Positions 4,262 to 41,000 of a DNA stretch of 64,000 nucleotides are shown here, piece after piece. Origin of the DNA: Macrostomum lignano (taxonomy: Eukaryota); the NCBI GenBank assembly GCA_002269645.1, contig NIVC01000180.1:248001-312000 (forward strand). The letters are read 5' to 3'. The notes below the pieces were generated by a model, which was not told the origin of the DNA, made no database searches, and saw only the letters and a list, made by a program, of their open reading frames with translations. Positions within the stretch are counted from its first letter, which is position 1. Each line of letters opens with the position of its first letter. A program made the position numbers and the translations under genes.

Positions 4262-9029
<4,768 letters not shown>

Positions 9030-9629
9030 GCTGGCTGGCACGGACTCGCTGAGCTGCTTCGGAGACTCCGGCAGAGCAACTGCTGGCTGCGGGCGGCTCC
9101 TCCGTCCTTGGCCGGCTGGCGCGAGATTTTCTTCTCGCGGGCTCCGCGGCGCGGGGGCGGCGGAGATTTTCGCCCCCGGAGCCGGCCAGTGAAGAGCGGG
9201 GAAAACGGGGGTGGGGAAGAAAATCTCCAAGCAAAGGGGATAGAATTTATGGGGGATTTGGAGGGGAGGGGCACAGTACATGTCGATCGTGTGGAGGGGG
9301 GAGCTGCCGGACCCCCGATCCCAGAATTTCCCCGTCCCCCTGTCTGAGCGGCTTTCGCAAGGCCGCGATGGGATCAGAGAGGGATTGAGGGGTTGGGAAC
9401 TTTTTCTGCCAAAAGTTCCTTCTTTCCTGGCTTAGGCCTCTCTATCATCGATTGAGGAGTGGCGATCTATAGGCTCGGGTCTCATGAGTTTGGCAAGATT
9501 TGCGTTTGCATTCTGTTTCACTGGATCAACCAGCCATTCATTGTGATGACAAATTATTAATGCAATATTTTGAAGCCAGATTTCCAATTATTTCGCTCAC
9601 TTTGCATTCTTTTAAAAGAATGGAAATTA

Positions 9630-11783: not shown

Positions 11784-12078
11784 GACACCCAGTCTGACAC
11801 CCCTGACACACAATCTGGCACCTCTGACACACAATCTGGCACCTCTGACACACAATCTGGCATCCCTGACACACAATCTGGCATCTCTGACACACAATCT
11901 GGCATCCCTGACACACAATCTGGCATCTCTGACACACAATCTGGCATCCCTGACACACAATCTGGCACCTCTGACACACAATCTGGCATCCCTGACACAC
12001 AATCTAGTACCCCTGACACACAATCTGGCATCCCTGACACACAAGCTGGCATCCCTGACACACAATCTGGCACCCCGG
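11784..12078. repeat. 21-bp minisatellite (ctgacacacaatctggcaccc) upstream of the innexin; same family as 19325-20065
   Basis: About 13 tandem copies seen directly. Confidence 0.95.
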
Positions 12079-12274
12079 ACCTCATTTGTGCTTGCACCAA
12101 ATGCTTCAGTGAGGCCTTCAATGAGGCGCTATTTGCCCCCTGGCGCACTGGCCATCCCGATTCGAATACTCGATCGTACGCATGCACTAAAATGAGTTGC
12201 TGAATGCAATGATTTGTCAAACACCGACCCAACCGCATCCTAAAAATATTGCAGAATTGCTTTAACCAGCCGCA

Positions 12275-13508
12275 ATGATTCTTCAAGACTTCTTCACCTA
12301 CATGCGGCAGGCGGAGGTGCTCAGCCACGTTGGCTTGGACGACTTTGCCGACAAGCTGAGCTTCATCTACTCTGGTGAGTCGGCTTTGACCCCTGAGCAC
12401 ACGCAGTTTCACACAGGACTCAAGTACAGATGGATATTCGCAGGAAGGTTGCGTGCACCCTGGCGCTACGCCTTTGGCGACACCGTGGCACAAGCAGCAG
12501 CGAGGCAATCCTGGACATTTATTGCATTTAGAGCGCGGGATATTGCATTCACACACACGCTCACACGGGTTGTACAGCAGCCCTGACTCTCCCATCGTCA
12601 GGAATGTACACACTTAGTAGTTCTCAAGGTCGTAAATCGCTCGACAAGACACATTTACCGCTGACTCAGCCACAAGCATAGAACTCGAACTCGCATTGCA
12701 GTCTGGTTCCTGCTGGTCTGCAGCAGCCTCGCCACTGCCAAGAACTACTTCGCCAGCCCGATAGTCTGCTACCTGCCCTCCATCGTGGGCTCGCACGAAG
12801 GCCAAAGCAGCTACGTGAACAGCATCTGCTACTCGGAGGGCACCTACAATGTGCCCCCCGCCGAGTTCCTCATCGACTCCTCCGACCCGGACTGGGACCA
12901 ACCGTACCGCAGCCGCAAGATTTTCTACTACCAGTGGCTTCCGCTGGTGCTCGGCCTGCAGGGCGCGCTGCTGTACAGCCCGCGCATCGTCTGGCAGGTC
13001 GCCGTGGCCCGCTGCGGCGCCGGCGTCAACCTGCTGCAGCTGGTGCGCTCGGCTCGCGAGGCCGCCGCCGAGCCGCTGGCAACGAAAGTGCCGGACGGCC
13101 GGCGAGAGAAACTTCTGAGCAGCTGCGTGAGTCAGGCGGACCTCTGGCTGGACTGCTGGGCGGCCTGCAGGTCCCGCCTGGCCGCTGCCTACCTGGCCGT
13201 CAAGTGCCTCTACGCTGGCAACGCCGTCTGCCAGCTGCTGCTGATGGCCAGCCTGCTGCAGCTCGGCTCCTCCAACTCCAAGACCGGCCTGGCGGCCCTG
13301 CCGGTGCAGGCGGCGAGTTTCGGCGCCTCCTTGCTGGCTGATCTGGCAGCGGGTGAGAGGAGAGGGGGGAGAGGAGCTTCTCTGGGGTCTCTGAGCAAGG
13401 CTTTTCTTTGGCTTTGCTCCCCTTGTTTCAGCGCGTTATTATCAATTTCTCAGAATAGTCGCTAGCAAAGCACTGGAACGATGGACCCATCCCCGTCTGT
13501 ATGTATCT

Positions 13509-13543
<35 letters not shown>

Positions 13544-16534
13544 TAGTAGTAAGTGCTGCAATTTTGCTTAAACTTCACTAGTTTGTAATGTTCAGTTGTG
13601 CTTTTTCAAAATGAATATCAATAGACTTGTAAAACCGCCACAGATACTGGCTTTAAGTGATACTTGGATGTCTATACGGCAGAGAAGCAAAGTCACGGGT
13701 AGCCAGAGGCGAGGGGGCAAGGGGGCACCCGCACAATAGGCTGACAAAGAACTACGGCACCTGATTAGGCGCACCCTTCAAAATTGTTGTGACGCCCCCA
13801 ACAATGGCGCTTCTAAGACAACCTTGGGATAAGCAACAGCTGACCACTGAGCTATAACACACTAATAGTCCGGCTTCTCCCCCCCACCGCAGGCAGGGAC
13901 TGGCGAGCCACCGGGCTGTTCCCCAGGAGCGGCTGTTGCGCCGTGCTCACCCGGCAGTCCTCCGGTGCCCAGCATCAGTTCGCCCAGTGCGCCCTGCCGG
14001 TGAACATGCTTCACGAGAAGCTGTTCATATTCCTGTGGTTTTGGTTCACCTTCCTGCTGGCGATGTCGCTCATCAGCCTGGCAGTCTGGGTGGCTTGGCT
14101 CCTGCCAGTCTGTCCGGTGAAGCGAAGCGTGAAGCGGATGATCTTCCTGAGCGGCGCTCCGTGCGCCAATCCGGCAGAGAGGCGAGTCATCAGGTAGGAG
14201 GCGAGTTTGCATGGGATGCAGATTTTGTGAGGTTTGATTCTGAAGGAAAGCAACGCTGTTCTCTCCTGAGTGGGTCTTCTTGAGTGCAAAGTGGGTCTTC
14301 GTGAGTGCCAAGTGGATCTTCTTGAGTGCAGAGTGGGTCTTCTTGAGTGCCAAGTGGGTCTTCTTGAGTGCAAAGTGGGTCTTCTTGAGTGCAGAGTGGG
14401 TCTTCTTGAGTGCCAAGTGGGTCTTCTTGAGTGCAAAGTGGGTCTTCTTGAGTGCAAAGTGGGTCTTCCTAAGTGCAAAGTGGGTCTTCTTGAATGCAAA
14501 GTGGATCTTCTTGAGTGCAAAGTGGGTCTTCTTGAGTGCAAAGTGGGTCTTCTTGAGTGCAAAGTGGGTCTTCTTGAGTGCAAAGTGGGTCTTCTTGAGT
14601 GCAAAGTGGATCTTCTTGAGTGCAAAGTGGGTCTTCTTGAGTGCAAAGTGGGTCTTCTTGAGTGCAAAGTGGATCTTCTTGAGTGCAAAGTGGGTCTTCT
14701 TGAGTGCAGAGTGGGTCTTCTTGAGTGCAAAGTGGGTCTTCTTGAGTGCAAAGTGGGTCTCCCTGAGTGCAAAGTGGTTCTTCTTGAGTGCAACGTGGGT
14801 CTTCCTGGGTTTCAAAGTACATCTTGGCTTTTCAAGGTGCAACGCGGTCCAACCAGTGTGAAAAGTTGTTGTGGGATTTTCAGTGTCTAAACTGAGCCTT
14901 GTTACAATGTAAAAATAGTCTTTTATGATGGCAAAAGGCCTCTGACGGCTCCATAATTGTGTGCTCTGTCTGATAAAGATGCGCCTTCCGAATGCTAGGA
15001 TGCAATAGACACGGAAAGCTGATCTAGGAGCTTGAGCACTTACCTTTCACGAACGTCAAACCTGGCAATTCGCAAAGTATAATGATACTTTATACGAGTA
15101 CTTCAAGTATGCACACCACCCGATCATTGGAAGTCAGGGCAGATGGACGCTTTGCGCGAAACCGTGTCTGCCTACGGATCCGTGAGAGCGAGTGACGTGT
15201 GAATGGGCAGTCTTAACTGGCTCTGGATCCACTGCTGCCAGCAGTTGCACAAATAACCCCTCACTGCTTAACATCGCAGGTCATTCGCCCAAGACTACCT
15301 TCGGCATGACGGCGCATTACTCATCAGCATGCTGTCAATCAACTGCGGCAACTCCGTCGCTAGCGACATCTGCTGCGGCCTCTACCGGAAATTCCGGTCG
15401 CGACACGAGCCCGAAGGCTCGGTGACCGGCGCCATCACGAGCAGCGCCGCCTCCTCGGCGCGGTCCCTGAGCCAGGAGGAATCCGCCCAGCCCGCACCCG
15501 TTCACAAGAGGCCCCGAAAGATTGGCTTCAAGTTCAAACGAGTGAAGTGGGCGAAATTGCCCGACAGACCGGGAGACGACCTCGAGGATGACGAGGAGAG
15601 TCAGCGAGACGATAGGCGCAGGCTATTCAAGGACGTCAGCGCTGATCATTTCTGCGACTGTGAGGCCCAGCTGGACTGCGATGCCTCCGCCGATGCACCT
15701 GCGGCAAGAACGCTGGCTGCCGCGGTCGCAATTGTAAACGAGGCCCAGGACAGCAGAGACCGGGCCGACTCGGCGGCCGAGGCTGCCAACGCTGCCGACG
15801 ATGACGGATTTGCTGGCGAGGCCAGGAGTGGAAGCTCCGGCTACTGCCACATCGGCGAGGACGACGGCGACGGTCCAGCTGACGAAGACGATGAGGACGA
15901 TGATGACGGAGGCGGCGAAGGTGGCGATGATGCAACGGTTCTCCACCGTCAAGAGGTGCCAAGCGGGCGGCCTTCCGGCCGGCAAAGAGAGAACCGGGGG
16001 GGGGGGGAGAGGCCCTCGATCATAGTGTAAAAACTATGTTTCGGGGGCAAACCTTCCCCTATCAGAGTGGCTCTGGACCGACCACCCAGAGCACCTCCCT
16101 AAACAATATCAAGGTCAAAAACCCGATGGGAACGAGAGTAACCATTCGGGTAATCCACGCCTACCGGCGACAAAAGGATAACAAGACAAGAAGGTGGCGA
16201 TGATGACGACGAGGGCGACGACGAGGAGGAAGACGTCAGCGAGAGTGACGGCGGCGGCGAGGAGAGCCTCGTCGATGAAGCCGATCAGGAGGAGAGCGAG
16301 GATGTCGAGAAAGAAGCTGAAGAGGGCAGCGAGAGCGAAGAGGCTGCTGAAGGCAGCGACGGGGTCGACAGCGCCGATGGCAGCGAGGATGTCGGCGAGA
16401 CGGGCAGCAGCGCCAACGGCTCCGACAGCGACGGAGACAGTCGAGAAGAACGGGAGGCAGACGGCGGTGGAGGGGACAACCCTGCGGGTGTTGCAGAAGC
16501 GGCCAGCGATATGGAGAGCCTGGCGTCGGTGTGA
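12275..16534 (+). CDS. inx: Innexin (gap-junction protein): join(12275..12374, 12702..13352, 13893..14193, 15280..). As assembled it stops at 16030; with the exonic insertion removed it continues to TGA at 16534
   Basis: DDFADKLS N-terminus, PIVC / NSICY extracellular cysteines, YYQW motif, YLAVKCLY, DWxxTGLFPRxxxC, QCALPVNMLHEKLFIFLWFW, YLRHDG. All three GT-AG introns join in phase (1,1,2). Confidence 0.95.
14270..14812. repeat. 21-bp minisatellite (gtgggtcttcttgagtgcaaa) in innexin intron 3
   Basis: About 25 tandem copies. Confidence 0.95.
15933..16189 (+). mobile_element. 257-bp retroposed insertion (5'-truncated LINE 3' end or SINE) inside the last innexin exon
   Basis: Perfect 16-bp direct repeat gaaggtggcgatgatg at 15917-15932 and 16190-16205. 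The 3' end has a hairpin (cccgatgg/ccattcggg) and an acaag-repeat tail. The reading frame is restored when the insertion plus one TSD copy is removed. Confidence 0.88.
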
Positions 16535-16582: not shown

Positions 16583-16856
16583 ATGGCGCCCAATCTGATT
16601 TAGTAGCGCCCAATCTGATACAGTGGCGCCCAATCGGATACAGTGGCGCCCAATCGGATACAGTGGCGCCCCATCTGATACAGTGGCGCCCAATCTGATT
16701 CAGTAGCGCCCAATCTGATACAGTGGCGCCCAATCTGATTCAGTAGCGCCCCATCTGATACAGTGGCGCCCAATCTGATTCAGTAGCGCCCAATCTGATA
16801 CAGTGGCGCCCAATCTGATTCAGTGGTGCCCAATCTGATCCAGTGGCGCCCAATCT
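16583..16856. repeat. 20-bp minisatellite (tggcgcccaatctgatacag) just downstream of the ancestral innexin stop
   Basis: About 13 copies seen directly. Confidence 0.93.
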
Positions 16857-17765: not shown

Positions 17766-20700
17766 CAGTGAGCTCCGTCAGCACAGCTGACAGGCTGGCA
17801 GGCTGGAAGCCTGGCCTAGCAACCAGGTACAGCTGGCAGGAGTCGCCACGCACGGCATAGCAGGCGCAGTCCTGCAGACTCCAGCCGAGCTGCATCTTGC
17901 GACGCGCCAGCAGTGGGGCGGCCACAGCATCCGCCGCCTGATCCTCGGAGAACTGCGGCGCGCTGTGGGCGATCAACCGCAACAGATGAGGCGCGGAGGC
18001 TGGGCGGATGGCGGACACGATGCAGCTGTTGGCGGCAGCGTCTCGGTAGCAGAGGCAGTCGATGTTGGGGTCCAGGTTCAGCTTGTCGGGCAGGCTGCGC
18101 TGAACACTGCCGAGTGCCTGCGGGAGTCAGTCAGTTGGTCATCTCAGTTGGCGCATGCACAGCCTGTTATGATCTTTGATTGGCTAAAGCTTCCCAGGCA
18201 TAATATTCCCAGACAGTAACATTCACATGAAACAATACCCCCTGGCTCACAACACAATGACACAACACCCACCTGACAAAGTACCACAGACGTACAGTAA
18301 CACTCACCTGACCAAAAACCTGACAACACCAACCAGACACAACACCTACCTGACACAAAACACCTGAAACAAATCCCACATGACACAAATCCCACATGAC
18401 ACAACACCCACCTGACACAAAACCCACCTGACACAAATCCCACCTGACACAAAACCCACCTGACACAAAACCCACCTGACACAACACCCATCTGACACAA
18501 AACCCACCTGACACAACACCCATCTGACACAAATCCCACTTGACACAAAACCCACCTGACACAAAACCCACCTGACACAACACCCATCTGACACAAAACC
18601 CACCTGACACAAAACCCACCTGACACAACACCCATCTGACACAAAACTAACTTGACACAATACCCACCTGACACAACACCCACCTGACACAACACCCACC
18701 TGACACAACACCCACCTGACACAACACTCCGCTGACGGGAGTCCAGGCGGCCTCGGCGTGCCGCAGGATGTCAGTCAGCGTCGGCTGGCCGCCGCAGACG
18801 CACAGAGCACAGACGCCGGGCAGCAGGGTGACCGCGGCCAGCCGGAACACCAGAGTCTTGCTCAGGCTGCCGATGTACACAGGCACGTCGGCGCTGCGCC
18901 ATCAGCCGCCGCCAGCGCCAGGTGGCCCAGCAGGATCTGCTCGGTGGCTGACAGGAGGCGCCACTGCTGGGAGGCGGCGGCCCGGCGCCCGGCAACCAGC
19001 AGGCAGCCGTACTGGCAGGTGAACTTGGCCAAGTAGGCGGCCAGCGCCCGGTCCAGGGCGGCCTCCTCCGAGGCCTGGCCGCAGCGCAAGATGCTGGGGG
19101 CGCAGAGAAGCTCGGCTGGGCCGCAGGCGGCGGCCAGCTGCGGCAGCAGGGTGCGCAGCGGCTGCAGGCGCTTTGCGGCGCTAGCCTGTATTATTCAAAT
19201 TATTTGACTGTTTTGGAATGTTTAAAATTTTTGGGATGGGATAGGATGCAAAGGTCGAAAATTCCTTTCAGCTACCATCAGGCTCGCCCCGCTGACACCC
19301 TGTTTGACGCATCAGAAATTGCCTTTGGAGCCTCTGACACCCAGCCTGGCGCCTCTAACAGCCAATCTGGCGCCTCTGACACCCAATCTGGCGCCTCTGA
19401 CACCCAATCTGGCGCCTGACACCCAGCCTGGCGCCTCTGACACCCAATCTGGCGCCTCTGACACCCAATCTGGCGCCTGACACCCAGCCTGGCGCCTCTG
19501 ACACCCAATTAATCTGGCGCATCTGACACCCAGTCTGGTGCCCTTGACACCCAATTAATCTGGCGCATCTGACACCCAGTCTGGCGCCCTTGACACCCAA
19601 TCTGGCGCCTCTGACACCCAATCTGGCGCCTCTGACACCCAGCCTGGCACCTCTGATACCCAATCTGGCGCCTCTGACACCCAGCCTGGCACCTCTGATA
19701 CCCAATCTGGCATCCCTAACACACAATCTGGCGCCTGACACTCAGCTTGGCGCCTCTGACACCCAATCTGGCGCCTGACACCCAGCCTGGCTCCTCTGAC
19801 ACCCAATCTGGCGCCCTCGACACCCAATCTGGCGCCCTCGACACCCGATCTGGCGCCTCTGAAACCTGATCTGGCGCCCCTGACACAAATCTGGCGCCTG
19901 ACACCCAGCCTGGCGCCTCTGACACCCAATTAATCTGGCGCATCTAACACTAAATCTGGCACCTCTGACACCCAGTCTGGCGCCTCTGACATTCAGTCTA
20001 GCGCCCCTGACACCCGATCTGGCGCCTCTGACGCCAAATCTGGCGCCCCTGACACCCAGTCTGGCTTAGACAGTCAGTTAGTTAGCAGGGGGCTTTAGGC
20101 GCTACCGCAAATCAAGTGACAGTCACAGTCGACTTGCAGAAAGCACACAGGTAAGCTAATTAGCTAAGCTAATTGAATTTAACATTTACTGATAAAGCCG
20201 GCCCGCGCACCTGGGGGTCCTCCTCTGAATGGAACATTCGCACCGCGCCGGCCAACAGAGCGGCCAGGCTGTCCAATTCCTGCAGGTGCTGCCGGCAGCC
20301 GCAGGCGACCAGGACGCAGCTGAGGCCGGGGTGGACCTCGAACCAGCGCGCCGAATCTGCGCCAGAGCTGGCGGCGCCAGTCGAGGTGGCCCGACGGAGG
20401 CGGCAGCGGCGCCTGTCGGCGAACACCTCGCTGGTGACGAGAGTTGCCAGGGTTGCCTGCGTGCGGAAATGACGCATATATGCTTACTTTTCCTGTTATC
20501 TTACTTACTTACTGACTTTAAGTAGTCCGCAGAGAATATTGTAACAATGTTTTGTGTTGTGCCAGGATCAGTTTTTTCGACAGAGAAAGAAGATGCAGAT
20601 GCAAGCAAGAGGACGCTAAGATAGACTAAGTCGAAAGGCAAATAAGAAAAACTTATAAGTGGAAATATCAAAGTTTGTCTATCGATCTCTCTATCGATTA

Positions 20701-20896: not shown

Positions 20897-22215
20897 CTGG
20901 AATTTGAGGAATTTGCAAGGTTACAAAGATTGAAGCTGTGAGTACTCCAAATACACAAGATAATCTTTTGGCATATATAATATCAAATCAAAATGGTATG
21001 CACCAAACATGGTGGACATCTGTAATAAGGCAACATGACCACACAAAAAATAACTGTAAAGTATAAATTCGAACCAGAACCATAAAATATAGACTAGCCT
21101 AAAATTAACAAACAAAAGTAAGCTTTGAGTTTTCAGTTCCTTCTATAAATAGACCATTTGAAAATTGGTTTTATATAAAATTAAGTTTAGTCTATAATTA
21201 TAAAACATAAACTATAATAAGTAAATAGTGCAGTACACATCTTTTTATGCAGCTAGAATGAAATACACTCAATGTACCTTATTAACTGCACGAAAGTTGT
21301 TAAATTTATTACTTTTAAGTTTTAGACAAGCCTTACATGCTAGGAGTTGTGCAAACATAGTAGGGAAGCTAACCCTGCTAAACGTTTTTAGCAAAAAAAT
21401 TAGCGGCTTAAAGTAAAATAATATCTAACTGGATAGCTTTTAACGTTGTAACAAAACTATATAATATGGAAATATGCTAAGCCAAGGCCAAGCAAGCAAG
21501 CAATTAAAAGCAAATAATAATATAGAGTCAAACTTGAGATTTTTGATCACACGATAGCTCAAAATTGAAGTAATAAGGTCAGTAGTTACTTCAAAGATTT
21601 AGTTTACACACAGACAGCCAGTGCAATTACTTATAGTTCTTGCAAGCCGCACGGCACCGCCTAGCGCTTAAAAGTCTACATGACCGGATTCCGATAATTC
21701 TTAATTACAGAATATGTTAAAAAGAAGCATCTAAAATAAGAAAAAAACTTTAGAAGAAAAAAATTAAGAATTATTCAAATCGCAAAAAAGTACTGAAGTG
21801 TTAGTTGCAGCATAAAACAATAAAAATTTCCTCAAAGCACATAAAAAGTCGTTACATTGTTATGTTAAGTAACAAAACTTTAAATTATAACATTCTTGGA
21901 AATGACAAATATTTATAAATAAAAAATTTCTATTATTACACTTAGTGATACGAAGAGTTGCCTAAATCTATATAACATTACATGAAAAACTTCACTGACA
22001 AATAGTATACATTTCTTATAATCTAATAGAAAATTACAAAAATGAAGACAAGAACCTTTTTTATGTTATTGAATCGACCCAGGTGGTTGATGTGTTTGTG
22101 GTCCGTAGATCACTTGACTTACTTGACTTGACTTAGCTGCAGGGCTGTCCCGGAGGGGACACAGCGGGAAGGCGCGGGCGCCCATTCCGCTAGTCCCTGA
22201 ACGGCCGACGCGTCG

Positions 22216-25200
22216 CTATGGACGGAGGGTTGGCGCCGCCCAGGGAGGTCCCCCAGTGTCGCCAGCAGCTATGGTGCTCTCTGGAAAGGAGAGTTCAGCC
22301 CTGCGGGTGGCCCGAAGGTAGCGCATGAGCTGATTAAAGTTTTCGGGTTTGCACGCTTCAGTAATAGATGTGTGTGGCCCGAGGTAAGTGAGTCTGGCCC
22401 GCGTGAAGGCGGGACAGATGCTGACGAAATGCTCAGCGGTTTCGTCACCTGAGTTGCAGAAACTACAGGTGGCGTTGGTGGCGTTGCCCTGCAGGTACTG
22501 GTGCCTGGAGAAGCAGCCATGACCAGAGAGGGTCATGGTGGCAGCCCGGATGTCTCTGCGCGAGAGGCGCAAGAGGAGCTTCCGGAGCTGGTGAGAGGGC
22601 TGAGGGACAGCGCCTCTGGATTGCCTGCAGTTCGTGCGGTTCGCCCAAGTCGAGCGGTGCTGAGTCCTGATCCACGCTTTGATGCGCGAGTCGATGACAC
22701 AGCCAGGAATCGGGACAAGAGGTTCGGGGCCGAGAGAGGAGCCGGAGGCACCAACTTTTGCAAGGGTGCCAGCCAACTCATTTCCTCGGATCCCCACATG
22801 CCCCGGAACCCACTTAAGGGTAATTTTGTTGGCGGAACCCAACACATTGAGGAGTTTGATACAGTCAAGGACTGTAGCAGAGTTGGTGCTGCAGCCACTG
22901 ATGGCGTGCAAGGCAGCTTGGCTGTCCGAATGGAAAATGATGTTCTTACCAGTAACGCCAGTGGCGAGAAGCTCTGCAGTGCAGGAGCTGATGGCCAGAA
23001 CTTCATTTTGGAAAACACTGGAGTTGACCCCAGTGTATTGAGCGTGGGTAGCGATGACCTTCCCGTTCAGAAAGATTCCAACACCAAAGCCGGTGTTGGC
23101 TGACTGCTTAGAACCGTCGGTGTAGCAATGAAGCTCACCAGGGTTCCAATGGTCATTGATGTTATCGCGCGAGTCGATAGCTACGGAGTAGCGCTGTCTC
23201 AGGTTGAGCGTTGAGGCAATGCCATCGGTGAAGACGCGATTGGCCTGACACTCGTTGAGAAAGTTGAGGCACAGATCGCTATGCGGGACAAGGTTCCGCT
23301 TAGCAGGTGCTCTCATGTAAATGAATTTGACGCCGGCATCAATTAGACGCCGCGTCGTTCTAGCCGCCTCACCCCTGATGAAGAGGTCAAGAGGCGGAAG
23401 ATTAAGAAAGGCCCCCATGCCAGCAAAGGGCGTGGACCTGGTGGCGTTGCAGATGAGCCTACACGCTCTGCCTTGGATCGTGTTGAGCAGGTCTGCATGG
23501 CTTTTGACCTGGGTAGCGCTAACCCAGACAACAGAGGCGTACGTAATGGCAGGTCTAACTACGGAAGTATAGATCCACCAAAGCCGCTTTGGGGATAGAC
23601 CCCAAGAAGTGCCAAGTGCTCGTCGGAGCTGGGCCAGGATGGCTGAGGCACGCTTAGCTTTTGCTTTCACGTGGAAGGACCAGTTGAGCCGGTGGTCAAG
23701 TGTGACCCCGAGACATCTGGTCTGGTGCGCGAAGGCAATATCTCTGCCGTAGAGCTGCAGAGGACGTATGTTCCAGCGTAGTCTGCTGGTAAACATAATG
23801 GCAACGGTTTTGGGCTCAGAGAGTTCCAAACCATTGTCATTGGCCCAGGATTCTGCTTTGCGGATAAAGCTCTGCATCAGATCCCTGAGCGTGCTGGGAG
23901 ACGGTCCTGCCACAATGGCCGTGACGTCATCAGCATACCCGACTTTGAAGACGGGGTCAGGTCGGGAGTCACTCAGAAGAGCGTCCATGACCAGGTTCCA
24001 GAGCGTCGGGGTGAGGACTCCGCCTTGGGGTCCACCCTTACAGACTCTGGTGGAGGCAGTTTGCCCAAGAAGTTGGGCAGTGACCGTACGGTTGGAGATC
24101 ATGTACATGATCCACCGTATGAGGGTAGCATGAGCTTTGCGATTTTGAAGGGCCCTCTGAAACGCTTCAAAGATAACGTTGTCGAAGGCGCCAACAATGT
24201 CAAGAAAGAGAGCCAGGGCGTAACCGTCACCCAGTACCGCCCGTTCAATCTTTTCGACAATCGCATGCAGGGCGCTGTCAGTCGACCTCCCGGTACGGAA
24301 GGCGTGCTGATTATTGCTGAGGGGCATCGCTGTCAGCTCGCAGGAGAGCAGCCGCCAGAGAATAAGCCTCTCAGTGAGCTTAAGCATTGCTGACGTTAAG
24401 CTAATTGGCCGGAAGGCCTTGACGCTTTGGTAGTCACCCTTCCCAGGTTTGGGAATAAAGACTACTCGAGCTTCAGTCCAGCTTTTGGGAACGTATCCCA
24501 GCTGGATAGAGGCCCGCATAAGATTGCGGGTGAGTCTCAGGAACGAGGGTATCTTGGCTGCTTCACGAAGGAGAACAGGGTAGATACCATCAGGTCCAGG
24601 AGATTTGAAGGGTTTGAAGGTTCTGACCGCACGAGCGATTAGGTCTTCAGTGACAATGCCCGCCGCTAGGGTGGCTCCATCCATCGAATGGTTGGGCTCC
24701 GGTCTAGCAGTAGGTACCCTCGGGAAGAATGTGCTAAGCATATGCTGAAGCACTTCTTCAGGGTCTTTAGTAAGAGAGCCATCATCTTTTTTGATCATGG
24801 CTAATTTGGACATTTTGTCCATTGTAAGGGCCTTGACAAGCCTAGAAGTAGGTCTGTCTTGATCCAATTCATTGCAGAATTGGCGCCACTTACATTCCTT
24901 GGCCTTGCGCACTTCAGATTTGAAATTGCGGGAGGCTTGCCGGAAAAGCTCCATGTCCTCCGGGTTTCCGGTCTTCATGGCACGGCGATGAAGGCTTTTG
25001 GCCTTCCGCCTGAGTTTCCCCAGCTCCGGGTTCCACCACGGCGCCGAGGTCTTGCCTCTGTAGGCGCGAGCAGGACAAGCCGCTTCGTAGGCTGCAATAA
25101 TGCAACCTGTCAGCGTCTCAGCCATATGATCCACATCCTCGCAGGTCTCAATCGGACGTAAGTCCGTGAGTTCCTGCAGGTGCAGATCAAGGGCAGCCTT

Positions 25201-25956
25201 GTAGGCCGCCCAATCAGTGTTGCGGATATTGCGTCTCCAAGTGATCGGAGACTGGGTTTTAGTGTCCGCGATATTAAAGGCGATAAAGCAGTGGTCAGAC
25301 AGGGAGGGCTCCTCAGACCAGACTCTCCACTCCTTGACTCTGTCAAAGAGTCTTGGGGTAACGAGTGTGGCGTCGAGGACCTCGGTCCATCTGCCATTAT
25401 TAAAGGTAGGAGTGCTGCCGCGGTTGCAGAGCATGAGGTTTGTGTTAGAGATGAGGGCCAGAAGCTCCTCTCCTCTAGTGTTGGTATCTTTGCTGCCCCA
25501 GTGCTTGTGGTGCGCGTTGAGGTCGCCCCCTAAGCACAGCTCAGCGTTCTGGGACTCGCAGTACTGCGCAAGGCGCAGTAAACTCTCGGGAGCAGGGTCT
25601 CTGTCGCCTGGGATATAAACCGAGGCAACAAGACACGTACGCGGAGAGAAATGATTAGATTGGATGACGCAAAGGTCTCCATCAGAGAGATCAGTCCTCA
25701 GCCAAGCCTGGAGATGGCTAGCAGCGAGGATAGCCGCTCTAGGGCGGCTGTTCCCCGGGCCACACACATAAAAATCAGAGTAGCCAGAGGGAATGTTGGG
25801 CAACTTACCGTTGCGCATCCAGGGTTCCTGGATCAGGATGAGGCCTGGCCTGTACAGCTCAGCAATCTTCATCAGATTTACTGACGCAGATACGCAATGC
25901 TGTAAATTTATTTGCAGACAGAATGTCGCTCCTTTGGCAGCGTGGAGCTTAGTCAT
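22216..25956 (-). CDS. LINE ORF2: AP endonuclease + reverse transcriptase + RNase H + C-terminal CCHC finger (1246 aa)
   Basis: APE motifs QINLQH, LIQEPW, GGDLNAHH, SDH; RT motifs FRPISL, GGPQGGVLTP, YADD; RNase H motifs YTDGSK, QNEVLAI, SDSQAAL, WVPGH, GNELAG; CSFC..ETAEH..SIC. Confidence 0.97.
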   Translation of the reverse strand: MTKLHAAKGATFCLQINLQHCVSASVNLMKIAELYRPGLILIQEPWMRNGKLPNIPSGYSDFYVCGPGNSRPRAAILAASHLQAWLRTDLSDGDLCVIQSNHFSPRTCLVASVYIPGDRDPAPESLLRLAQYCESQNAELCLGGDLNAHHKHWGSKDTNTRGEELLALISNTNLMLCNRGSTPTFNNGRWTEVLDATLVTPRLFDRVKEWRVWSEEPSLSDHCFIAFNIADTKTQSPITWRRNIRNTDWAAYKAALDLHLQELTDLRPIETCEDVDHMAETLTGCIIAAYEAACPARAYRGKTSAPWWNPELGKLRRKAKSLHRRAMKTGNPEDMELFRQASRNFKSEVRKAKECKWRQFCNELDQDRPTSRLVKALTMDKMSKLAMIKKDDGSLTKDPEEVLQHMLSTFFPRVPTARPEPNHSMDGATLAAGIVTEDLIARAVRTFKPFKSPGPDGIYPVLLREAAKIPSFLRLTRNLMRASIQLGYVPKSWTEARVVFIPKPGKGDYQSVKAFRPISLTSAMLKLTERLILWRLLSCELTAMPLSNNQHAFRTGRSTDSALHAIVEKIERAVLGDGYALALFLDIVGAFDNVIFEAFQRALQNRKAHATLIRWIMYMISNRTVTAQLLGQTASTRVCKGGPQGGVLTPTLWNLVMDALLSDSRPDPVFKVGYADDVTAIVAGPSPSTLRDLMQSFIRKAESWANDNGLELSEPKTVAIMFTSRLRWNIRPLQLYGRDIAFAHQTRCLGVTLDHRLNWSFHVKAKAKRASAILAQLRRALGTSWGLSPKRLWWIYTSVVRPAITYASVVWVSATQVKSHADLLNTIQGRACRLICNATRSTPFAGMGAFLNLPPLDLFIRGEAARTTRRLIDAGVKFIYMRAPAKRNLVPHSDLCLNFLNECQANRVFTDGIASTLNLRQRYSVAIDSRDNINDHWNPGELHCYTDGSKQSANTGFGVGIFLNGKVIATHAQYTGVNSSVFQNEVLAISSCTAELLATGVTGKNIIFHSDSQAALHAISGCSTNSATVLDCIKLLNVLGSANKITLKWVPGHVGIRGNELAGTLAKVGASGSSLGPEPLVPIPGCVIDSRIKAWIRTQHRSTWANRTNCRQSRGAVPQPSHQLRKLLLRLSRRDIRAATMTLSGHGCFSRHQYLQGNATNATCSFCNSGDETAEHFVSICPAFTRARLTYLGPHTSITEACKPENFNQLMRYLRATRRAELSFPESTIAAGDTGGPPWAAPTLRP

Positions 25957-25979
25957 ACTGTATTAAATGCAATATCTGG

Positions 25980-27500
25980 CTAGAGCCCAGGGCCATCAAG
26001 GAGACTTGGACAACAGATCGTCCTCGTCCCAGGCCGCTGGGGCTTGACTGGGAGATGGGAGTTGGTCGACGTCCATGGCCTCCTCACCCCCACCGGCCCC
26101 CCAGCAGAGTCCTCAGGCTCCGATGACAGGATGGAGGAAGCTTCCTCACCTGCATCTTTACCTTCAGACCCCACCAAGGTGGCCGAGGAGAGCTCGGATT
26201 CCGAAGACCCGGCCTCGTCCTCAACTCCTTCTCCGACTGGCAGGTTTGGTTCCCGGGGCTCGGCCGGAGCCGTTACCGCGGTCGCCGAACTGCTGCTAGC
26301 AGAGGGGCGAGATGCAGCTTTGGCTTTGGGATCGGCTTGCGCCTTTCCTTGGGCCTTAGACTGCGCCCCGCTCTTGCCGGAGATGCCGGGGTTGGCAGTA
26401 GCCTTCCCTTTGGCAGACTTTCCTCGGCGCAACTTGAGCTTGAGGGCACCCAGCTGGAAAGAGGATCCATTAGGGTACCGACTCGCCCAAGTGCTGGAAA
26501 GGCCGAGGACAATTGAGTTGCCCGTCTCCCCCCTGCGGACTTTACGGTGATACACCAGTCCACTAGCAGGGAGGTCGGGGTTCAGACGCAGTAGGACCCG
26601 GCGAATAACGTCTGGTCCAGCTGCGGTGCTCTTAGCAGGGACGAAAACCACATAGGGTATCGTCTTTGGACGCTGGCCCTCGCGAAGAAAAAGAGCTCCG
26701 CCAAGGTCAGCATCCAAGGAGACCGTCGGTAGCCGCTGGAGCAGCCGCCGAGCGTCCTCCTCGCTGCTAGGAGCAATAAGAACGAATGTGCTTCGCAGCA
26801 CCATCCGCTCAACGCCGATGGAGATTCCCTCCTCGACAGTCAGCTCAATCAGATAGGAGTCAACAGCACTCCACACTTTTTGAAGCTGATCAGTGGTCCA
26901 GTCCTGGTCGCGACCTTGGATGATCACTCCCGGGATTTTGGCCTTGGCCTTCGCCGCAAAGGTAGCTCCCGAAGGAACCTCCTTGTTGGCAGTGGCCATT
27001 TGTTGCGCCGTGGTTTCGGCCTCAGCAGCCGCGGCAGCAGCTCCAGGGAGCGCCGCCGCTGAACTACTGGAGCTTCCACCGGCCGGCCCGCCTGGTTGCC
27101 TTGGGACTCCAGTCGCTTCAGCATCCATGGTGGACGCCGCCGCTTTGGCCCCCGCAGCTCCCTTCTTGGCCTGCCTTTTGGCGCGTTGTTTAGCGCGTTT
27201 GCGCTCAAGCCGAGCCCGCTGAGCTTCATCGGATCTGCCAGATTTGGCCGGTCCTTTAGGCTCAGAGCTCGCGGTTCCCTTAGATCCACCAGCGGAGCTG
27301 GCAGGTCTTAGGGTATTTTGAGTTTGGTAGCTCTGGTCGGATCTGCCAGCAGAGCCAGCCGGTCCTTCCTTTGCCACAGTTGAATCAGTCGGTTGGGATC
27401 TGCCAGCAGGGCCGGCCGGTCCTTCAGACTGAGGTTGGGGTTTAGAAGGGTCCCCGTCCCTAGAAATAGCTTGTTTATCCATAGTCGGCTCGAAGGCCAT
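25980..27500 (-). CDS. LINE ORF1 (gag-like, about 506 aa from the first ATG at 27500; open from GTG at 27557)
   Basis: Long ORF directly upstream of ORF2 (23-nt gap), inside the TSDs; basic RARLERKRAKQRAKRQAKK patch; no CCHC knuckle seen. Confidence 0.85.
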   Translation of the reverse strand: MAFEPTMDKQAISRDGDPSKPQPQSEGPAGPAGRSQPTDSTVAKEGPAGSAGRSDQSYQTQNTLRPASSAGGSKGTASSEPKGPAKSGRSDEAQRARLERKRAKQRAKRQAKKGAAGAKAAASTMDAEATGVPRQPGGPAGGSSSSSAAALPGAAAAAAEAETTAQQMATANKEVPSGATFAAKAKAKIPGVIIQGRDQDWTTDQLQKVWSAVDSYLIELTVEEGISIGVERMVLRSTFVLIAPSSEEDARRLLQRLPTVSLDADLGGALFLREGQRPKTIPYVVFVPAKSTAAGPDVIRRVLLRLNPDLPASGLVYHRKVRRGETGNSIVLGLSSTWASRYPNGSSFQLGALKLKLRRGKSAKGKATANPGISGKSGAQSKAQGKAQADPKAKAASRPSASSSSATAVTAPAEPREPNLPVGEGVEDEAGSSESELSSATLVGSEGKDAGEEASSILSSEPEDSAGGPVGVRRPWTSTNSHLPVKPQRPGTRTICCPSLLDGPGL

Positions 27501-28948
27501 GATAAAAGGTTGGTGGGCTACCCTCAAAGGGGCGCGGTACCCACCCGGCCGCTCCACCTGACCGGGCAGTAGGCCAATAGCACCCTCAAGGCTGGCCCGA
27601 CACCAGGAGGGGGACCGCTTGCGACCGGACTACTCCCCGGCCTTCCAGCCCATCGGCACGGTCAACACCTTAGGCATTAGAGAGTACGTTAAGCAGTACC
27701 ACGGCCTGCAGGTTGGCGAGCCAGACCCGCATACCCAAATTCGGCCGAAGCCACTGGATAGGGTCGCCAGCGCCGGAGCCCAGTCTGTCCAGCAGCCCTA
27801 GGGACTGCCTTGAACACACGCGGGGACGAGTACCCTGGGTCGACTTGCGAGACAGCCTGGGGGGGGGGGGGTCTGCGGCTGCCAGAGGCAAATAGAGGGT
27901 GCAGACCTCCCACCAGCCTTGACCTGCTGAAGATAGGGGCAGGCGTGAAGCATCGCAGACCTTAGCCCATGGGCCTAGTCTGTCTCATACTTCACTGGCA
28001 TGCTGAATACGCCTTCGCGCGTAGATCACATTCTATACTAACTAACAACGTTTTTACTTTTATTTTTTGCGCGACCTTTTTAAAGCTCTTGAAGGGTAAT
28101 GATTGGGTTCACCAGTTCACCCTCCAAAAAATATAACAAAAAGCTGCTCTCCTAAAGGGCTAGAGGGCACGCACAAGTTTAAAATTATAGGCGCTAGTAT
28201 AACGTTTCGTGCTCTATAAAAAATAAACATTTTTTCAGTTTTTCAGTCTGAATTTTTTAGAACTTTTTGCTATGTAGTTTGTTGCATTTATTGGTAGAAG
28301 TTGTAAACTGCTAGGTTTTTTAGACCTATTCTATTGCTATATTTCTTGATTTGATTCACAAATTTTGAACTCACATTTAATTTAAGTACTTCTGAAAGCA
28401 GATTAAATAAACACAAAGTACTGTACTATACTATAATTTATAAACCAATAAAATTGAATACTATAATATTTTATTCTAAAACAAAAAGATATAGATAGTA
28501 GACTAAAATGCCTATGAAGAATATATGATTATTTTATTTTAATAATATAAATAGCCTAGCATTTTTATTGAGTCTATTTAGCATAGTTTTGAATTTTAGC
28601 TTTGGTGATGACTCATTTACTTTTATGTTATGAATATAAAAAAATATGGCATATTATTAGTGGTTAGATAATAGCAATTATACTGTAGAAGTGCTATAAT
28701 TAGTATAATATTATAATAGTATATCAATTATGACTAATAAATAGAAAATTCCAATTGATAGCTAATATCAATTAGTAAAATGCACCTAAAATTTCAATTT
28801 GTGGGAGGTTTGTATCTATTAGGCATGTCTATATGGGTTTTTTAAAGCTTTAATCTTGTTGCATATATAAAAGTATTTTAATAATAATATTAAAATTCAA
28901 GTATAATTCCTATTTATTAAGTTTTATATACTTTTTCTAAGTGAATAC

Positions 28949-38019: not shown

Positions 38020-41000
38020 ATGTCCGGTCCTTCGTCGCCGGCCCACCCGGCCGAGAACGGGTCGCTTCGCCTGTCGACCTGCCGCGTTCCCGGAGCGCCT
38101 CGGCCGCTGCGCTTCGCCAGAAGTCGTCGCAGCGTTTGGCAGCCGCGGCCGCAGCAGCGGCAGGCCAGCAGCCGGTGCCGGCACGGACGCAGCTGTCACC
38201 AGTGGCCGCAGGCGGGGCTGTCAGCGATTTTCAAGGACTTCGCTGGCAACACCACGGCGCACGGCATCCGCCAGCTGGCCCAGGCGAACGGCTGGTGCCG
38301 CCGGATCGTGTGGGCGGCCATTCTGACGGTGGTCACCGCCGGGGTGGCCACGCACCTGACCGTGGAGGTGATGCACTACTTCTCCTACCCCATCAGCGTC
38401 CAGACCAGCTTCATCCTGGGCGGCTACGCCTTCCCCGACGTGATCATCTGCGACCCCATCGGCCCCATCAACCCGCGCCTGACACTGCGCCGCAACGCGA
38501 GCTCCGGCCCGGCCGGCGACATCCTCATTGGCACCGAGGACGCCATCGTGCTGCCCGACTCCGGCGAGCTGCAGCAGAAGGACAAGTTCAGGTTCTTCCT
38601 GAGCCACTTCATCGACCTGCCGGCCAGCGGCCTGCAGCCGGCCGACTACATCATCTTCTGCCGCTACCAGAAGCTGCCCTGCACCTTCCTGAACTTCAGC
38701 GTGTACTACCACCATGACTTCATGAACTGCTTCGTGTTCCGGCCGCCGACTCGCCTCGTCGCCGCGGCTGGACCCGACAGCGGCCTCACCCTTGTGCTGA
38801 ACGTGCCGCAGCGCAGCTCCGTTGAGTCGTTCTCGGAGTTTGGCGAGCGATACGAGGAGGCCCTGCTGCCGCTGGGCCTGCGGGTGTCCCTGCAGCAGGC
38901 CGACACCGTGCCGCGGCCCAGCGAAGGCGGCTGGATGCTGCCGAAGGGCATGCTGACCGAGATAAGCACCTGGCACTTCCGGTTAGCAGATGTGACTGGA
39001 CTGGTCTGGGGTGACCGTGCTATTATTGGTCTGCGGGGTGACCGCGTTTTGTGTGAGTGAGTGTTCGATGCGACCATTTTGACTGTCAGGCATGTGACCT
39101 TTACTGTCAGATGTGACCGTTGCTGTCAGGTGTGACCGTTACTGTCAGATGTGACCGTTGCTGTCAGGTGTGACCGTTACTGTAAAGTGTGACCGTTACT
39201 GTAAAGTGTGACCGTTAATTTCGGGTGTGACCGTTACTGTCGGATGTGACCCGTTACAGTCAGGTGTGACCGTTACTGTCAGATGTGACCGTTACTGTCA
39301 GATGTGACCGTTGCTGTCAGGTGTGACCGTTGCTGTCAGGTGTGACCGTTGCTGTCAGGTGTGACCGTTGCTGTCAGGTGTGACACCAAACCTCCTCCCC
39401 CCGCCCCCAGCTCCGCGCTGGCGAACACGCCGGTGGCGCCCTGCTCAGGCGAGAGCAGCAACCTCAGGCAGCGCAACCACGCCACGGGTCGCATAGAGGA
39501 GTTTTACTACCGCAAAGAGGACTGCGAGTACAACCGGCTGGTGGAGCGGGCCGGCCAGGTTTGCAACTGCTCCGTGCATGCTGACTACCCGCTTGGTGGC
39601 TCCGGCAACTCCTCCAGCGACGACGGCGGTCGCGACAGGTTTGTCGGCTGCCACGAGCCGTTCAGAATCACCCGACGGCTGTTCGACATGATCCTGCGGC
39701 TGCGGAAGGCCGGCCACAGCCACATCGGCGACCAGGCCGCTCAGCCGGCCATGGAGATCCTCGAGGACGCTGCGTCGCCGCTGAACCGCATCATCGACTG
39801 CTTCCAGGTAGCCGGCTGGGCAGTCAGTCATCAGTCTGGGTCTGGGCAGTCTTGATCATAGCATGCTGCTCTTGGTCATATCAGTCTGGGTGTGTCCGTT
39901 CAATGCACCTTCCTTTGGTTTAGCAATCTGAGTCATAGCTGTCTGGTTTTAACAATCTGGGTCATAGCTGTCTGGATCATAGCTGTCTGGTTTTAGCAAT
40001 TTGGGTCATAGCTGTCTGGTTTTAGCAATTTGGGTCATAGCTGTCTAGTTTTAGCTATCTGGGTCATAGCTGTCTGTGTTTTAGCAATCTGGGTCATAGC
40101 TGTCTGGGTTTAGCAATCTGGGTCATAGCTGTCTGGGTTTTAGCAATCTGGGTCATAGCTGTCTGGTTTTAGCAGTCTGGGTCATAGCTGTCTGGTTTTA
40201 GCAATCTGGGTCATAGCTGTCTGGTTTTAGCAATCTGGGTCATAGCTGTTTGGATCATAGCTGTCTGGTTTTAGCAATTTGGGTCATAGCTGTCTGGTTT
40301 TAGCAATTTGGGTCATAGCTGTCTAGTTTTAGCTATCTGGGTCATAGCTGTCTGTGTTTTAGCAATCTGGGTCATAGCTGTCTGGGTTTAGCAATCTGGG
40401 TCATAGCTGTCTGGTTTTAGCAATCTGGGTCATAGCTGTCTGGTTTTAGCAGTCTGGGTCATAGCTGTCTGGTTTTAGCAATCTGGGTCATAGCTGTCTG
40501 GTTTTAGCAATCTGGGTCATAGCTGTCTGGTTTCAGCAGTCTGGGTCATAGCTGTCTGGGTTTTAGCAATCTGGGTCATAGCTGTCTGGGTTTAGCAATC
40601 TGGGTCATAGCTGTCTGGGTTTAGCAATCTGGGTCATAGCTGTCAAGGTTTAGCAATCTGGGTCATAGCTGTCTGGGTTTAGCAATCTGGGTCATAGCTG
40701 TCTGGTTTTAGCAATCTGGGTCATAGCTGTCTGGTTTTAGCAATCTGGGTCATAGCTGTCTGGGTTTTAGCAATCTGGGTTATAGCTGTCTGGGTTTAGC
40801 AATCTGGGTCATAGCTGTCTGGGTTTTAGCAATCTGGGTCATAGCTGTCTGGGTTTTAGCAATCTGGGTCATAGCTGTCTGGGTTTAGAAATCTGGGTTA
40901 TAGCTGTCTGGGTCATAGATGTCTGGGTTTAGCAATCTGGGTCATAGCTGTCTGGGCTAGCAATCTGGGTCATAGCTGTCTGGGTTTTAGCAATCTGGGT

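What the first reader, a model, noticed from the sequence alone, without database searches (positions are those of the whole stretch)
15917..16205. Retro-insertion in an innexin exon whose TSD supplies AG|GT: a possible intron in the making
A 257-bp insert with a perfect 16-bp TSD and an (ACAAG)n tail interrupts the last coding exon. Unspliced, it replaces the last 109 aa with 32 novel residues (stop at 16030). However, the TSD reads GAAG|GTGGCG, so GT at 15921 and AG at 16192-16193 bound exactly 273 nt (insert plus one TSD), and splicing would restore the original protein perfectly. This is the proposed TSD-mediated intron-gain mechanism, caught at a very young stage. The acceptor is purine-rich and weak, so partial or no splicing is also plausible.
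Basis: partly seen in the sequence, partly recalled or inferred. Interest (0 to 1): 0.75.

Follow-up and report, generated by a model that had tools for sequence, protein, structure and literature searches.

The report
Retroelement fragment interrupting a flatworm innexin exon
A 257-bp retrotransposon-like fragment sits in the last coding exon of a Macrostomum lignano gap-junction (innexin) gene and cuts off its acidic tail; its duplicated target site happens to offer GT and AG in the right places for exact removal, but these splice signals are poor and splicing could not be tested.

Summary
A perfect 16-bp direct repeat (15917-15932 and 16190-16205) flanks a 257-bp foreign segment in the last exon of a four-exon innexin gene. 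The organism is Macrostomum lignano, shown by a 100% match to UniProt A0A1I8GPY9. Read unspliced, the gene loses 109 C-terminal residues and gains 32 new ones, with a stop at 16028-16030. Removing 15921-16193 (273 nt, GT..AG) restores the 677-aa protein exactly.

The insert looks like a target-primed retro-insertion. It has a long variable-type target-site duplication (TSD), no terminal inverted repeats, and a short (ACAAG)2 tail. A full-length LINE 6 kb away carries the same kind of pentamer tail. No parent element or second copy could be found.

The "intron in the making" reading is geometrically valid but poorly supported. The donor is GTGGCG, without the +5 G seen in all three real introns of this gene. 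The acceptor has 18% pyrimidines against 53-82% in the real introns, and it is the fourth of four clustered AAG sites. A better acceptor at 16496 competes with it. No transcript data were reachable.

The most likely outcome is a plain truncating insertion that leaves the whole innexin domain intact, in a genome known to be highly duplicated. Splice sites supplied by a TSD are already a documented mechanism (introners). Interest is modest unless RNA-seq shows the junction.

The parts
12275..16534 (+). Innexin gene of Macrostomum lignano. It has four coding exons (12275-12374, 12702-13352, 13893-14193, 15280-16534) and three GT-AG introns (12375-12701, 13353-13892, 14194-15279).
   Evidence: The conceptual splice gives a 677-aa ORF once the insert is removed. 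Pfam Innexin matches over the full profile, E=2.5e-62. UniProt A0A1I8GPY9 and A0A1I8G9X9 are 100% identical over exons 3-4.
15917..15932 (+). Left copy of the 16-bp target-site duplication GAAGGTGGCGATGATG. It contains AAG|GT; the would-be donor GT is at 15921-15922.
   Evidence: Exact string match. It is the longest exact repeat in the exon, and a codon-shuffle control reached this length in 1 of 300 trials.
15933..16189 (+). 257-bp foreign insert in sense orientation. It is probably the 5'-truncated 3' end of a non-LTR retrotransposon, or a SINE-like element. It ends in ACAAGACAA(G) and contains a 12-G run at 15996-16007.
   Evidence: It brings stops into the gene's frame. There are no inverted termini, no other copy in the window, no tRNA and no credible Rfam match, and no protein homologue. 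The RNA fold is -107.7 kcal/mol, z=-5.5.
16028..16030 (+). Premature stop codon TAA, used if the insert is retained.
   Evidence: Translation.
16190..16205 (+). Right copy of the target-site duplication. The would-be acceptor AG is at 16192-16193.
15921..16193 (+). Hypothetical 273-nt phase-1 intron, made of the insert plus one TSD copy. Its removal restores the native protein exactly.
   Evidence: In-silico splicing gives a protein identical to the empty-site protein. Rough PWM scores are donor 0.5 and acceptor -9.8 bits, against 4.5-6.5 and -2.2 to 5.6 for the three real introns.
15734..16213 (+). 480-nt in-frame 'intron' implied by the database gene model A0A1I8G9X9, which joins ...AAAVAI to GDDEEED... 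It skips the insert plus 69 native codons. Both splice sites are weak (ATT|GTAAAC ... GACGAG|GGC).
16206..16534 (+). Displaced 3' part of exon 4. It holds 109 codons of acidic, low-complexity tail plus the native TGA stop at 16532-16534.
   Evidence: A second frame is also free of stops over this stretch, so the open frame says nothing about selection or age.

Best explanation
A short fragment of a non-LTR retroelement inserted in the sense orientation into the last coding exon of a Macrostomum lignano innexin gene. The inferred mechanism is target-primed reverse transcription, which duplicated 16 bp of target.

The transcript is most likely not spliced at the new site, or only at trace level. 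It therefore encodes a 600-aa innexin with the complete channel domain. The last 109 residues of a long acidic, low-complexity tail are replaced by 32 element-encoded residues.

The premature stop lies in the last exon, so nonsense-mediated decay is not expected (inference from the general exon-junction rule). The allele is probably tolerated because the tail is dispensable, because the strongly duplicated DV1 genome carries other copies, or both. The AAG|GT inside the TSD is a coincidence that creates a formally perfect but weak GT..AG pair.

Shown here: the TSD, the insert, the effects on the frame and the splice-signal comparison. Inferred: the insertion mechanism, the lack of splicing, and that the allele is tolerated.
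For: - The TSD and the foreign segment were verified.
- The insert has no TIRs or LTRs.
- The tail is a pentamer repeat, (ACAAG)2. The intact LINE at about 22111-28019(-) has an (AAGTC/TCAAG)n tail and its own 10-bp TSD. That element encodes EN+RT+RNaseH and both ORFs are open, so LINEs with this tail type have been active recently in this genome.
- There are 3 nt of microhomology (AAG) between the tail and the target start, as expected for TPRT priming (read directly from the sequence).
- The innexin domain ends at residue 389 and the insertion follows residue 568.
- The three real introns of the gene have donors GTGAGT, GTGAGA and GTAGGA, acceptors ending in GCAG, and 53-82% pyrimidine at -20..-4. 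The candidate has GTGGCG, GAAG and 18%.
- On a rough PWM, the candidate acceptor sits at the 49th percentile of the 114 AG dinucleotides scored in exon 4.
- AGs at 16176, 16185 and 16190 lie just upstream of the candidate. The donor's best in-frame partner is 16496 (TTGCAG). The TSD pair ranks 36th of 356 frame-preserving GT..AG pairs.
- The DV1 assembly contains 180 Mb of duplicated blocks at 95% identity or more (PMC5730564).
Against: - No RNA data could be consulted, so the absence of splicing is inferred from signal strength only.
- The PWM uses generic metazoan frequencies typed from general knowledge, and only three real M. lignano introns were available for comparison.
- The donor at 15921 is the best GT within several hundred bases (93rd percentile of GTs in the exon).
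- Both flanks are GAR-rich and resemble purine-rich exonic splicing enhancers, which can rescue weak sites (general knowledge).
- AGGT occurs only once in the 984-nt exon, so hitting it was a 1.3% event there (3% across the window).
- A database gene model does splice around the insert.
- No parent LINE or second copy of the insert was found, so a retroelement origin is not proven.
Confidence: 0.68

Rival explanations
1. Nascent intron. The 273-nt unit 15921-16193 is removed by the spliceosome in a meaningful fraction of transcripts, using the AG|GT duplicated in the TSD. The full-length innexin is then still made, and the insertion is nearly neutral and on its way to becoming a fixed intron.
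For: - Removal restores the exact protein.
- AAG|GT matches the classical proto-splice site MAG|GT (general knowledge).
- The donor is the best GT in the neighbourhood.
- The flanks are purine-rich and enhancer-like.
- Recruitment of one or both splice sites from a TSD or the neighbouring exon is documented for introners, including some derived from non-LTR retrotransposons (PMC9860276; PMC12130899; PMC11282704).
Against: - The acceptor has 18% pyrimidines and A at -3.
- It is the last of four AAG sites within 18 nt, and the other three would shift the frame.
- A stronger in-frame acceptor at 16496 competes for the same donor.
- The donor lacks +4A and +5G, unlike all three real introns of the gene.
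- No transcript-derived protein with the restored junction exists in the 5.8-billion-protein database.
Confidence: 0.12
2. The insert is bypassed by other cryptic sites. One option is the 480-nt in-frame excision 15734-16213 used by UniProt model A0A1I8G9X9. Another is 15921-16496. Either would give an internally deleted but C-terminally native innexin.
For: - A0A1I8G9X9 joins ...AAAVAI|GDDEEED... and is 100% identical to the window on both sides.
- 15921-16496 is the best-scoring of 356 frame-preserving pairs.
Against: - The 15734-16213 sites score worse than the TSD pair (donor -2.4, acceptor -11.3) and rank 114th of 356.
- The model is a fragment at both ends and may be an ab initio device to avoid the stop.
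- How it was built could not be checked, because Wasik et al. 2015 is not held.
Confidence: 0.08
3. The insertion is not biological. It is an assembly or long-read artefact (a chimeric read or mis-join), or it is a somatic or rare variant not representative of the line.
For: - The genome is hard to assemble, being more than half repetitive and duplicated (PMC5730564).
- The insert holds a 12-G homopolymer typical of error-prone stretches.
Against: - A perfect 16-bp TSD that precisely flanks a tailed foreign segment is the signature of a real transposition event, not of a mis-join.
- A gene model from the earlier WormBase ParaSite gene set detours around exactly this stretch, which suggests the insert is also in that assembly. 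The two assemblies share PacBio reads, however.
Confidence: 0.05
4. The insert was captured during repair of a staggered double-strand break, as filler DNA with flanking short direct repeats of the kind reported for new Daphnia introns. It was not placed by a LINE's own target-primed reverse transcription.
For: - No parent element or second copy was found.
- The tail is only two pentamer units.
Against: - 16 bp is long for repair-generated repeats.
- The tail is of the same kind as that of a bona fide LINE 6 kb away.
- Tail and target share a 3-nt microhomology, consistent with TPRT.
Confidence: 0.07

Closest known systems
Introners: transposable elements that create spliceosomal introns on insertion (Micromonas, Aureococcus, dinoflagellates and others; PMC9860276, PMC12130899, review PMC11282704)
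   Same: A mobile element lies inside a coding exon. The GT and AG are positioned so that removing the element plus one TSD copy leaves the mRNA unchanged. Recruitment of splice sites from the TSD or the neighbouring exon is documented, including cases where the element carries neither site. About 5% of classified introner families derive from non-LTR retrotransposons.
   Different: Introners are multi-copy families whose members are demonstrably spliced and carry or recruit adequate signals. Here there is one copy, no splicing evidence and poor signals. Most introners are DNA transposons with 3-9 bp TSDs. In the 2022 survey they were found in only two animal groups. Flatworms are not mentioned in that paper's text.
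Ordinary 5'-truncated LINE or SINE insertion into an exon (insertional mutagenesis by target-primed reverse transcription)
   Same: It has a variable-length TSD of 16 bp, sense orientation, a 3' simple-repeat tail abutting the TSD, no terminal repeats, and it truncates the ORF.
   Different: The parent element is unidentified. The tail is a very short pentamer repeat rather than poly(A), although a full-length LINE in the window has the same tail type.
Intron gain by duplication of an exonic AGGT (tandem-duplication model; recalled from memory: Rogers 1989, Hellsten et al. 2011)
   Same: Two copies of AGGT in direct orientation provide the 5' and 3' splice sites, and excision restores the original mRNA.
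   Different: In that model the intron body is duplicated exon sequence. Here the duplication is only the 16-bp TSD and the body is foreign DNA.
Maize Ds/dSpm elements spliced out of exons, and new Daphnia introns flanked by short direct repeats (recalled from memory: Wessler and colleagues 1987-89, Giroux et al. 1994, Li et al. 2009)
   Same: There is an insertion in an exon whose effect depends on use of cryptic splice sites at or near the element ends. Direct repeats lie at the intron boundaries.
   Different: Those cases have transcript evidence, and this one has none. The element classes and organisms also differ.

Membership tests
Non-LTR retrotransposon (LINE/SINE) insertion made by target-primed reverse transcription | Target-site duplication of variable length, typically about 5-20 bp, flanking the insert directly | tested here: met
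   A perfect 16-bp repeat lies at 15917-15932 and 16190-16205. It exceeds chance.
Non-LTR retrotransposon (LINE/SINE) insertion made by target-primed reverse transcription | A 3' poly(A) or simple-repeat tail abutting the downstream TSD | tested here: inconclusive
   There are only two units, ACAAGACAA(G), and the 10-mer pattern is not enriched in the window. In support, the full-length LINE at 22111-28019(-) ends in (AAGTC)n, the same kind of pentamer tail.
Non-LTR retrotransposon (LINE/SINE) insertion made by target-primed reverse transcription | Sequence identity to the 3' end of a parent element that encodes reverse transcriptase, or to a multi-copy SINE family | tested here: not met
   - No similarity to anything else in the 64-kb window, including the resident LINE's 3' UTR or ORF2.
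- No protein homologue of the insert's open frame.
- No match in metagenome contigs.
- The M. lignano genome itself could not be searched, so this is a limited test.
Non-LTR retrotransposon (LINE/SINE) insertion made by target-primed reverse transcription | Absence of terminal inverted or long terminal repeats | tested here: met
   No inverted repeat involves the insert ends.
Introner / transposon-derived spliceosomal intron | GT(GC)..AG boundaries placed so that excision leaves the coding sequence intact | tested here: met
   Removing 15921-16193 gives a protein identical to the empty-site protein.
Introner / transposon-derived spliceosomal intron | The element is actually removed from transcripts | not testable with these tools
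   No RNA-seq access. The protein databases hold only two gene-model fragments for this gene. The look-up of encoding contigs returned nothing.
Introner / transposon-derived spliceosomal intron | Splice signals comparable with those of host introns | tested here: not met
   The donor GTGGCG contrasts with GTGAGT, GTGAGA and GTAGGA. The acceptor is 18% pyrimidine against 53-82%, and ends GAAG rather than GCAG. Rough PWM scores are 0.5 and -9.8, against 4.5-6.5 and -2.2 to 5.6.
Introner / transposon-derived spliceosomal intron | A family of near-identical copies forming introns in many genes | tested here: inconclusive
   There is no second copy in the 64 kb. The genome-wide test was not possible.
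Innexin (invertebrate gap-junction channel, Pfam PF00876) | Full-length match to the family profile, including the YYQW signature | tested here: met
   PF00876 matches profile positions 1-333 of 333 on residues 22-389, E=2.5e-62. YYQWLP is present in exon 2. UniProt names the 100%-identical fragments 'Innexin'.

The most novel reading that the evidence does not exclude
The 273-nt unit is spliced in vivo at the AG|GT pair created by the target-site duplication. A single LINE-type retro-insertion in an animal would then have produced, in one step, a functional spliceosomal intron whose two splice sites both come from duplicated host sequence. That would be a newly born intron with its origin still fully legible.
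Probability: 0.1. Interest if true: 0.65.

Novelty: new member of a known kind. Interest (0 to 1): 0.3.

Why it matters
If the junction were found in RNA, this would be a rare animal example of an intron caught at birth. It would have an intact TSD, a retroelement body and an unchanged host protein. It would also allow a direct test of the old proto-splice-site/TSD model outside the protist and fungal introner systems.

As it stands, it is an ordinary exonic retroelement insertion that truncates a probably dispensable tail of one copy of an innexin gene, in a highly duplicated and repeat-rich genome. Its practical value is as a caution for annotation: an existing UniProt model invents a 480-nt intron to get past the insert.

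Tried and rejected
- **Other copies in the window.** I looked for another copy of the insert or a parent LINE with blastn at word size 7. Nothing beyond chance turned up. The neighbouring full-length LINE is unrelated at both DNA and protein level.
- **Known RNA families.** I tested whether the insert is a known RNA. Rfam gave only a sub-threshold hit to a bacterial riboswitch family (nhaA-I, 26.4 bits against a gathering score of 37), which I rejected as chance. No tRNA was found.
- **Coding potential of the insert.** The insert is open in one frame over all 86 codons. A phmmer search against 1.84 billion proteins returned three long tandem-repeat proteins, matched by several weak stretches at 27-33% identity. 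I rejected these as spurious. There was no Pfam hit.
- **Empty-site or spliced protein.** Two protein searches found only the cluster containing A0A1I8GPY9 and A0A1I8G9X9.
- **More M. lignano DNA.** I tried look-up of encoding contigs with the two UniProt fragments, the truncated exon-4 ORF and the LINE ORF2. None is on record. A metagenome scan with a 23-mer from the insert gave no matches.
- **How the UniProt models were built.** Wasik et al. 2015 is not held.
- **Open frame downstream as evidence of selection.** I rejected this because a second frame is also free of stops over the same purine-rich stretch.
- **'Very young' from the perfect TSD.** Zero differences in 16 bp only bounds divergence loosely, to roughly under 15-20% pairwise.
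- **Third protein search.** I ran no further search on the LINE, because the result would not bear on the finding.
Full report
[quoted passage not shown] The translated exon matches UniProt A0A1I8GPY9 ('Innexin', M. lignano) at 100% identity. Its cluster mate A0A1I8G9X9 maps back at 100% in three blocks.

I rebuilt the gene by hand from ORFs, GT-AG boundaries and protein continuity.
- Exon 1 is 12275-12374 and intron 1 is 12375-12701 (CTG|GTGAGT...TTGCAG|).
- Exon 2 is 12702-13352 and intron 2 is 13353-13892 (CGG|GTGAGA...CCGCAG|).
- Exon 3 is 13893-14193 and intron 3 is 14194-15279 (CAG|GTAGGA...TCGCAG|).
- Exon 4 is 15280-16534.

With the insert removed, the product is 677 aa. Pfam Innexin covers residues 22-389 over the full profile (E=2.5e-62). 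Residues 390-677 form a tail with no Pfam domain. The tail becomes strongly acidic and low in complexity towards its end.

GAAGGTGGCGATGATG occurs at 15917-15932 and again at 16190-16205, and the two copies are identical at all 16 positions. The sequences diverge immediately outside.

This is the longest exact repeat in the exon. Codon-shuffled exons reached 16 bp in 1 of 300 trials, and that counts any pair anywhere, not a pair bracketing a foreign segment.

The 257 bp between the copies (15933-16189) differ in character from the surrounding GAR-codon sequence. They bring stops into the gene's frame, contain a 12-G run, and fold unusually well as RNA (-107.7 kcal/mol, z=-5.5).

Read through, the protein keeps 568 native residues, adds 32 (ATVLHRQEVPSGRPSGRQRENRGGGERPSIIV), and stops at TAA 16028-16030. 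It loses 109 native residues. Deleting 15921-16193 (273 nt, GT...AG, phase 1) reproduces the empty-site protein exactly.

**What the insert is.** It has no inverted termini. It contains no tRNA and no credible Rfam family; the only hit is sub-threshold, to a bacterial riboswitch. It has no Pfam domain. One frame is open over the whole insert, but its only hits among 1.84 billion proteins are artefactual matches to tandem-repeat proteins.

The insert ends in ACAAGACAA followed by the G of the TSD, which makes two ACAAG units.

Six kilobases away lies a full-length non-LTR retrotransposon on the minus strand, at about 22111-28019.
- ORF1 is 525 aa.
- ORF2 is 1246 aa and carries endonuclease, reverse transcriptase and RNase H domains.
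- It ends in AAGTCAAGTCAAGTAAGTCAAGTG.
- It is flanked by its own 10-bp TSD, GTGATCTACG.

LINEs with pentamer-repeat tails are therefore present in this genome, and apparently recently active. The insert has the same kind of tail, a TPRT-sized TSD, and 3 nt of tail/target microhomology (AAG).

The resident LINE is not the parent. It shows no DNA or protein similarity to the insert. I could not search the rest of the M. lignano genome. My best reading is a 5'-truncated 3' end of another LINE family, or of a SINE that shares such a tail. The mechanism is inferred, not shown.

**Would it be spliced?** The geometry is exact, but the signals are poor.
- *Donor.* AAG|GTGGCG has good exonic bases but lacks +4A and +5G. 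All three real introns of this gene have G at +5.
- *Acceptor context.* GGATAACAAGACAAGAAG|G has 18% pyrimidines at -20..-4, against 53%, 82% and 65% for the real introns. It ends GAAG rather than GCAG.
The real introns score 4.5-6.5 (donor) and -2.2 to 5.6 (acceptor). The candidate scores 0.5 and -9.8.
- *Rank within the exon.* The donor is nevertheless the best GT in the neighbourhood (93rd percentile of exon GTs). The acceptor is merely median among the exon's AG dinucleotides.
- *Competing acceptors.* Three other AAG acceptors (16176, 16185, 16190) lie within 18 nt upstream of 16193. Each would shift the frame.
- *Competing in-frame pairs.* Of 356 GT..AG pairs that keep the frame to the native stop, the TSD pair ranks 36th. 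The best pair couples the same donor to TTGCAG at 16496.
- *Points in favour.* The flanks are purine-rich and enhancer-like. AGGT occurs only once in the 984-nt exon, so only 1.3% of 16-nt target windows there would have duplicated it (3% across the window).

**Independent annotation.** UniProt A0A1I8G9X9 joins ...AAAVAI to GDDEEED..., which excises 15734-16213. That is 480 nt, in frame, and covers the insert plus 69 native codons. Its sites (ATT|GTAAAC...GACGAG|GGC) score worse than the TSD pair, and the model is a fragment at both ends.

It most likely reflects a predictor stepping around the stop. I take it as weak evidence that the insert is also present in that earlier assembly, and not as evidence of splicing. 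The paper describing that annotation was not available.

**Consequence.** The premature stop is in the last exon, so by the usual exon-junction rule nonsense-mediated decay should not apply. A stable mRNA for a 600-aa innexin with an intact channel domain is therefore expected (inference).

The DV1 line's assembly contains 180 Mb of non-repetitive blocks duplicated at 95% identity or more, because of extra large chromosomes (PMC5730564). Intact copies of the gene may well exist, though I could not retrieve them.

The perfect TSD and the open downstream frame give only loose limits on age. Sixteen identical bases allow considerable divergence. A second frame is also free of stops over the same purine-rich stretch.

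**Comparison with what is known.** Creation of introns by transposable elements, with one or both splice sites recruited from the TSD or adjacent exon, is established for introners. Some families derive from non-LTR retrotransposons. In the 2022 survey they were found in only two animal groups.

The present case shares the geometry. It fails the features that define an introner and could be tested here: adequate signals are not met, a multi-copy family was not seen in 64 kb, and splicing was not testable. It is best filed as an ordinary exonic retroelement insertion with a coincidental proto-splice-site TSD.

**Verdict.** The retro-insertion is probable. Intronisation is possible but unlikely, at about 10% for meaningful exact splicing. 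Interest is modest at 0.3. It would rise to about 0.65 if junction reads were found in RNA from animals carrying only the filled allele.

Noticed in passing
window 22104-28029, minus strand: An apparently intact full-length non-LTR retrotransposon of about 5.9 kb. ORF1 is 25980-27557 (525 aa, no Pfam hit). ORF2 is 22216-25956 (1246 aa, with endonuclease, reverse transcriptase and RNase H domains). It has a pentamer-repeat tail, AAGTCAAGTCAAGTAAGTCAAGTG, at 22134-22111. It is flanked by the 10-bp direct repeat GTGATCTACG at 28029-28020 and 22113-22104. It is probably recently active.
   Followed up: partly
window-wide; e.g. 14269-14804, 16584-16856, 19326-20065, 11784-12080, 5875-7073: The density of tandem arrays is extraordinary (45 TRF rows with score 150 or more). 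There is a 21-mer x25 array inside innexin intron 3, a 20-mer x13.6 array starting 50 nt after the innexin stop codon, and a (TCTA)x300 array. Several 20-21-mer units share TGGCGCC and CCCAATC cores, which suggests a related satellite family.
   Followed up: no
window 15734-16213: UniProt gene model A0A1I8G9X9 removes 480 nt, the insert plus 69 native codons, through weak GT..AG sites. Its sister entry A0A1I8GPY9 reads into this stretch and stops at ...AIVNEAQ (window 15748). Both are fragments that begin at exon 3. This is likely an annotation artefact caused by the insertion.
   Followed up: partly
window 15931-16200: One reading frame is open across the entire insert (86 codons), and the insert RNA is predicted to be unusually stable (z=-5.5). 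No protein or RNA family matched, so the nature of the source element is unresolved.
   Followed up: yes
window 8304-9281 (-), 38020-39057 (+), 59191-60861 (-): The neighbouring genes are a Bcl-2 family member with a poly-Q stretch, an amiloride-sensitive sodium channel (ASC/DEG-ENaC) exon, and a MIZ/SP-RING zinc-finger (PIAS-like) protein. The Bcl-2 ORF appears to end at a TGG|GTGAGG donor at the conserved BH2 intron position; I did not verify this.
   Followed up: partly
window 16487-16496: A good native acceptor-like site, GTGTTGCAG|AA, lies 38 nt before the innexin stop. The A0A1I8G9X9 model ends just before it, at ...DNPA, next to a GT. There may be an alternative 3' exon or terminal splice in the native gene.
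   Followed up: no
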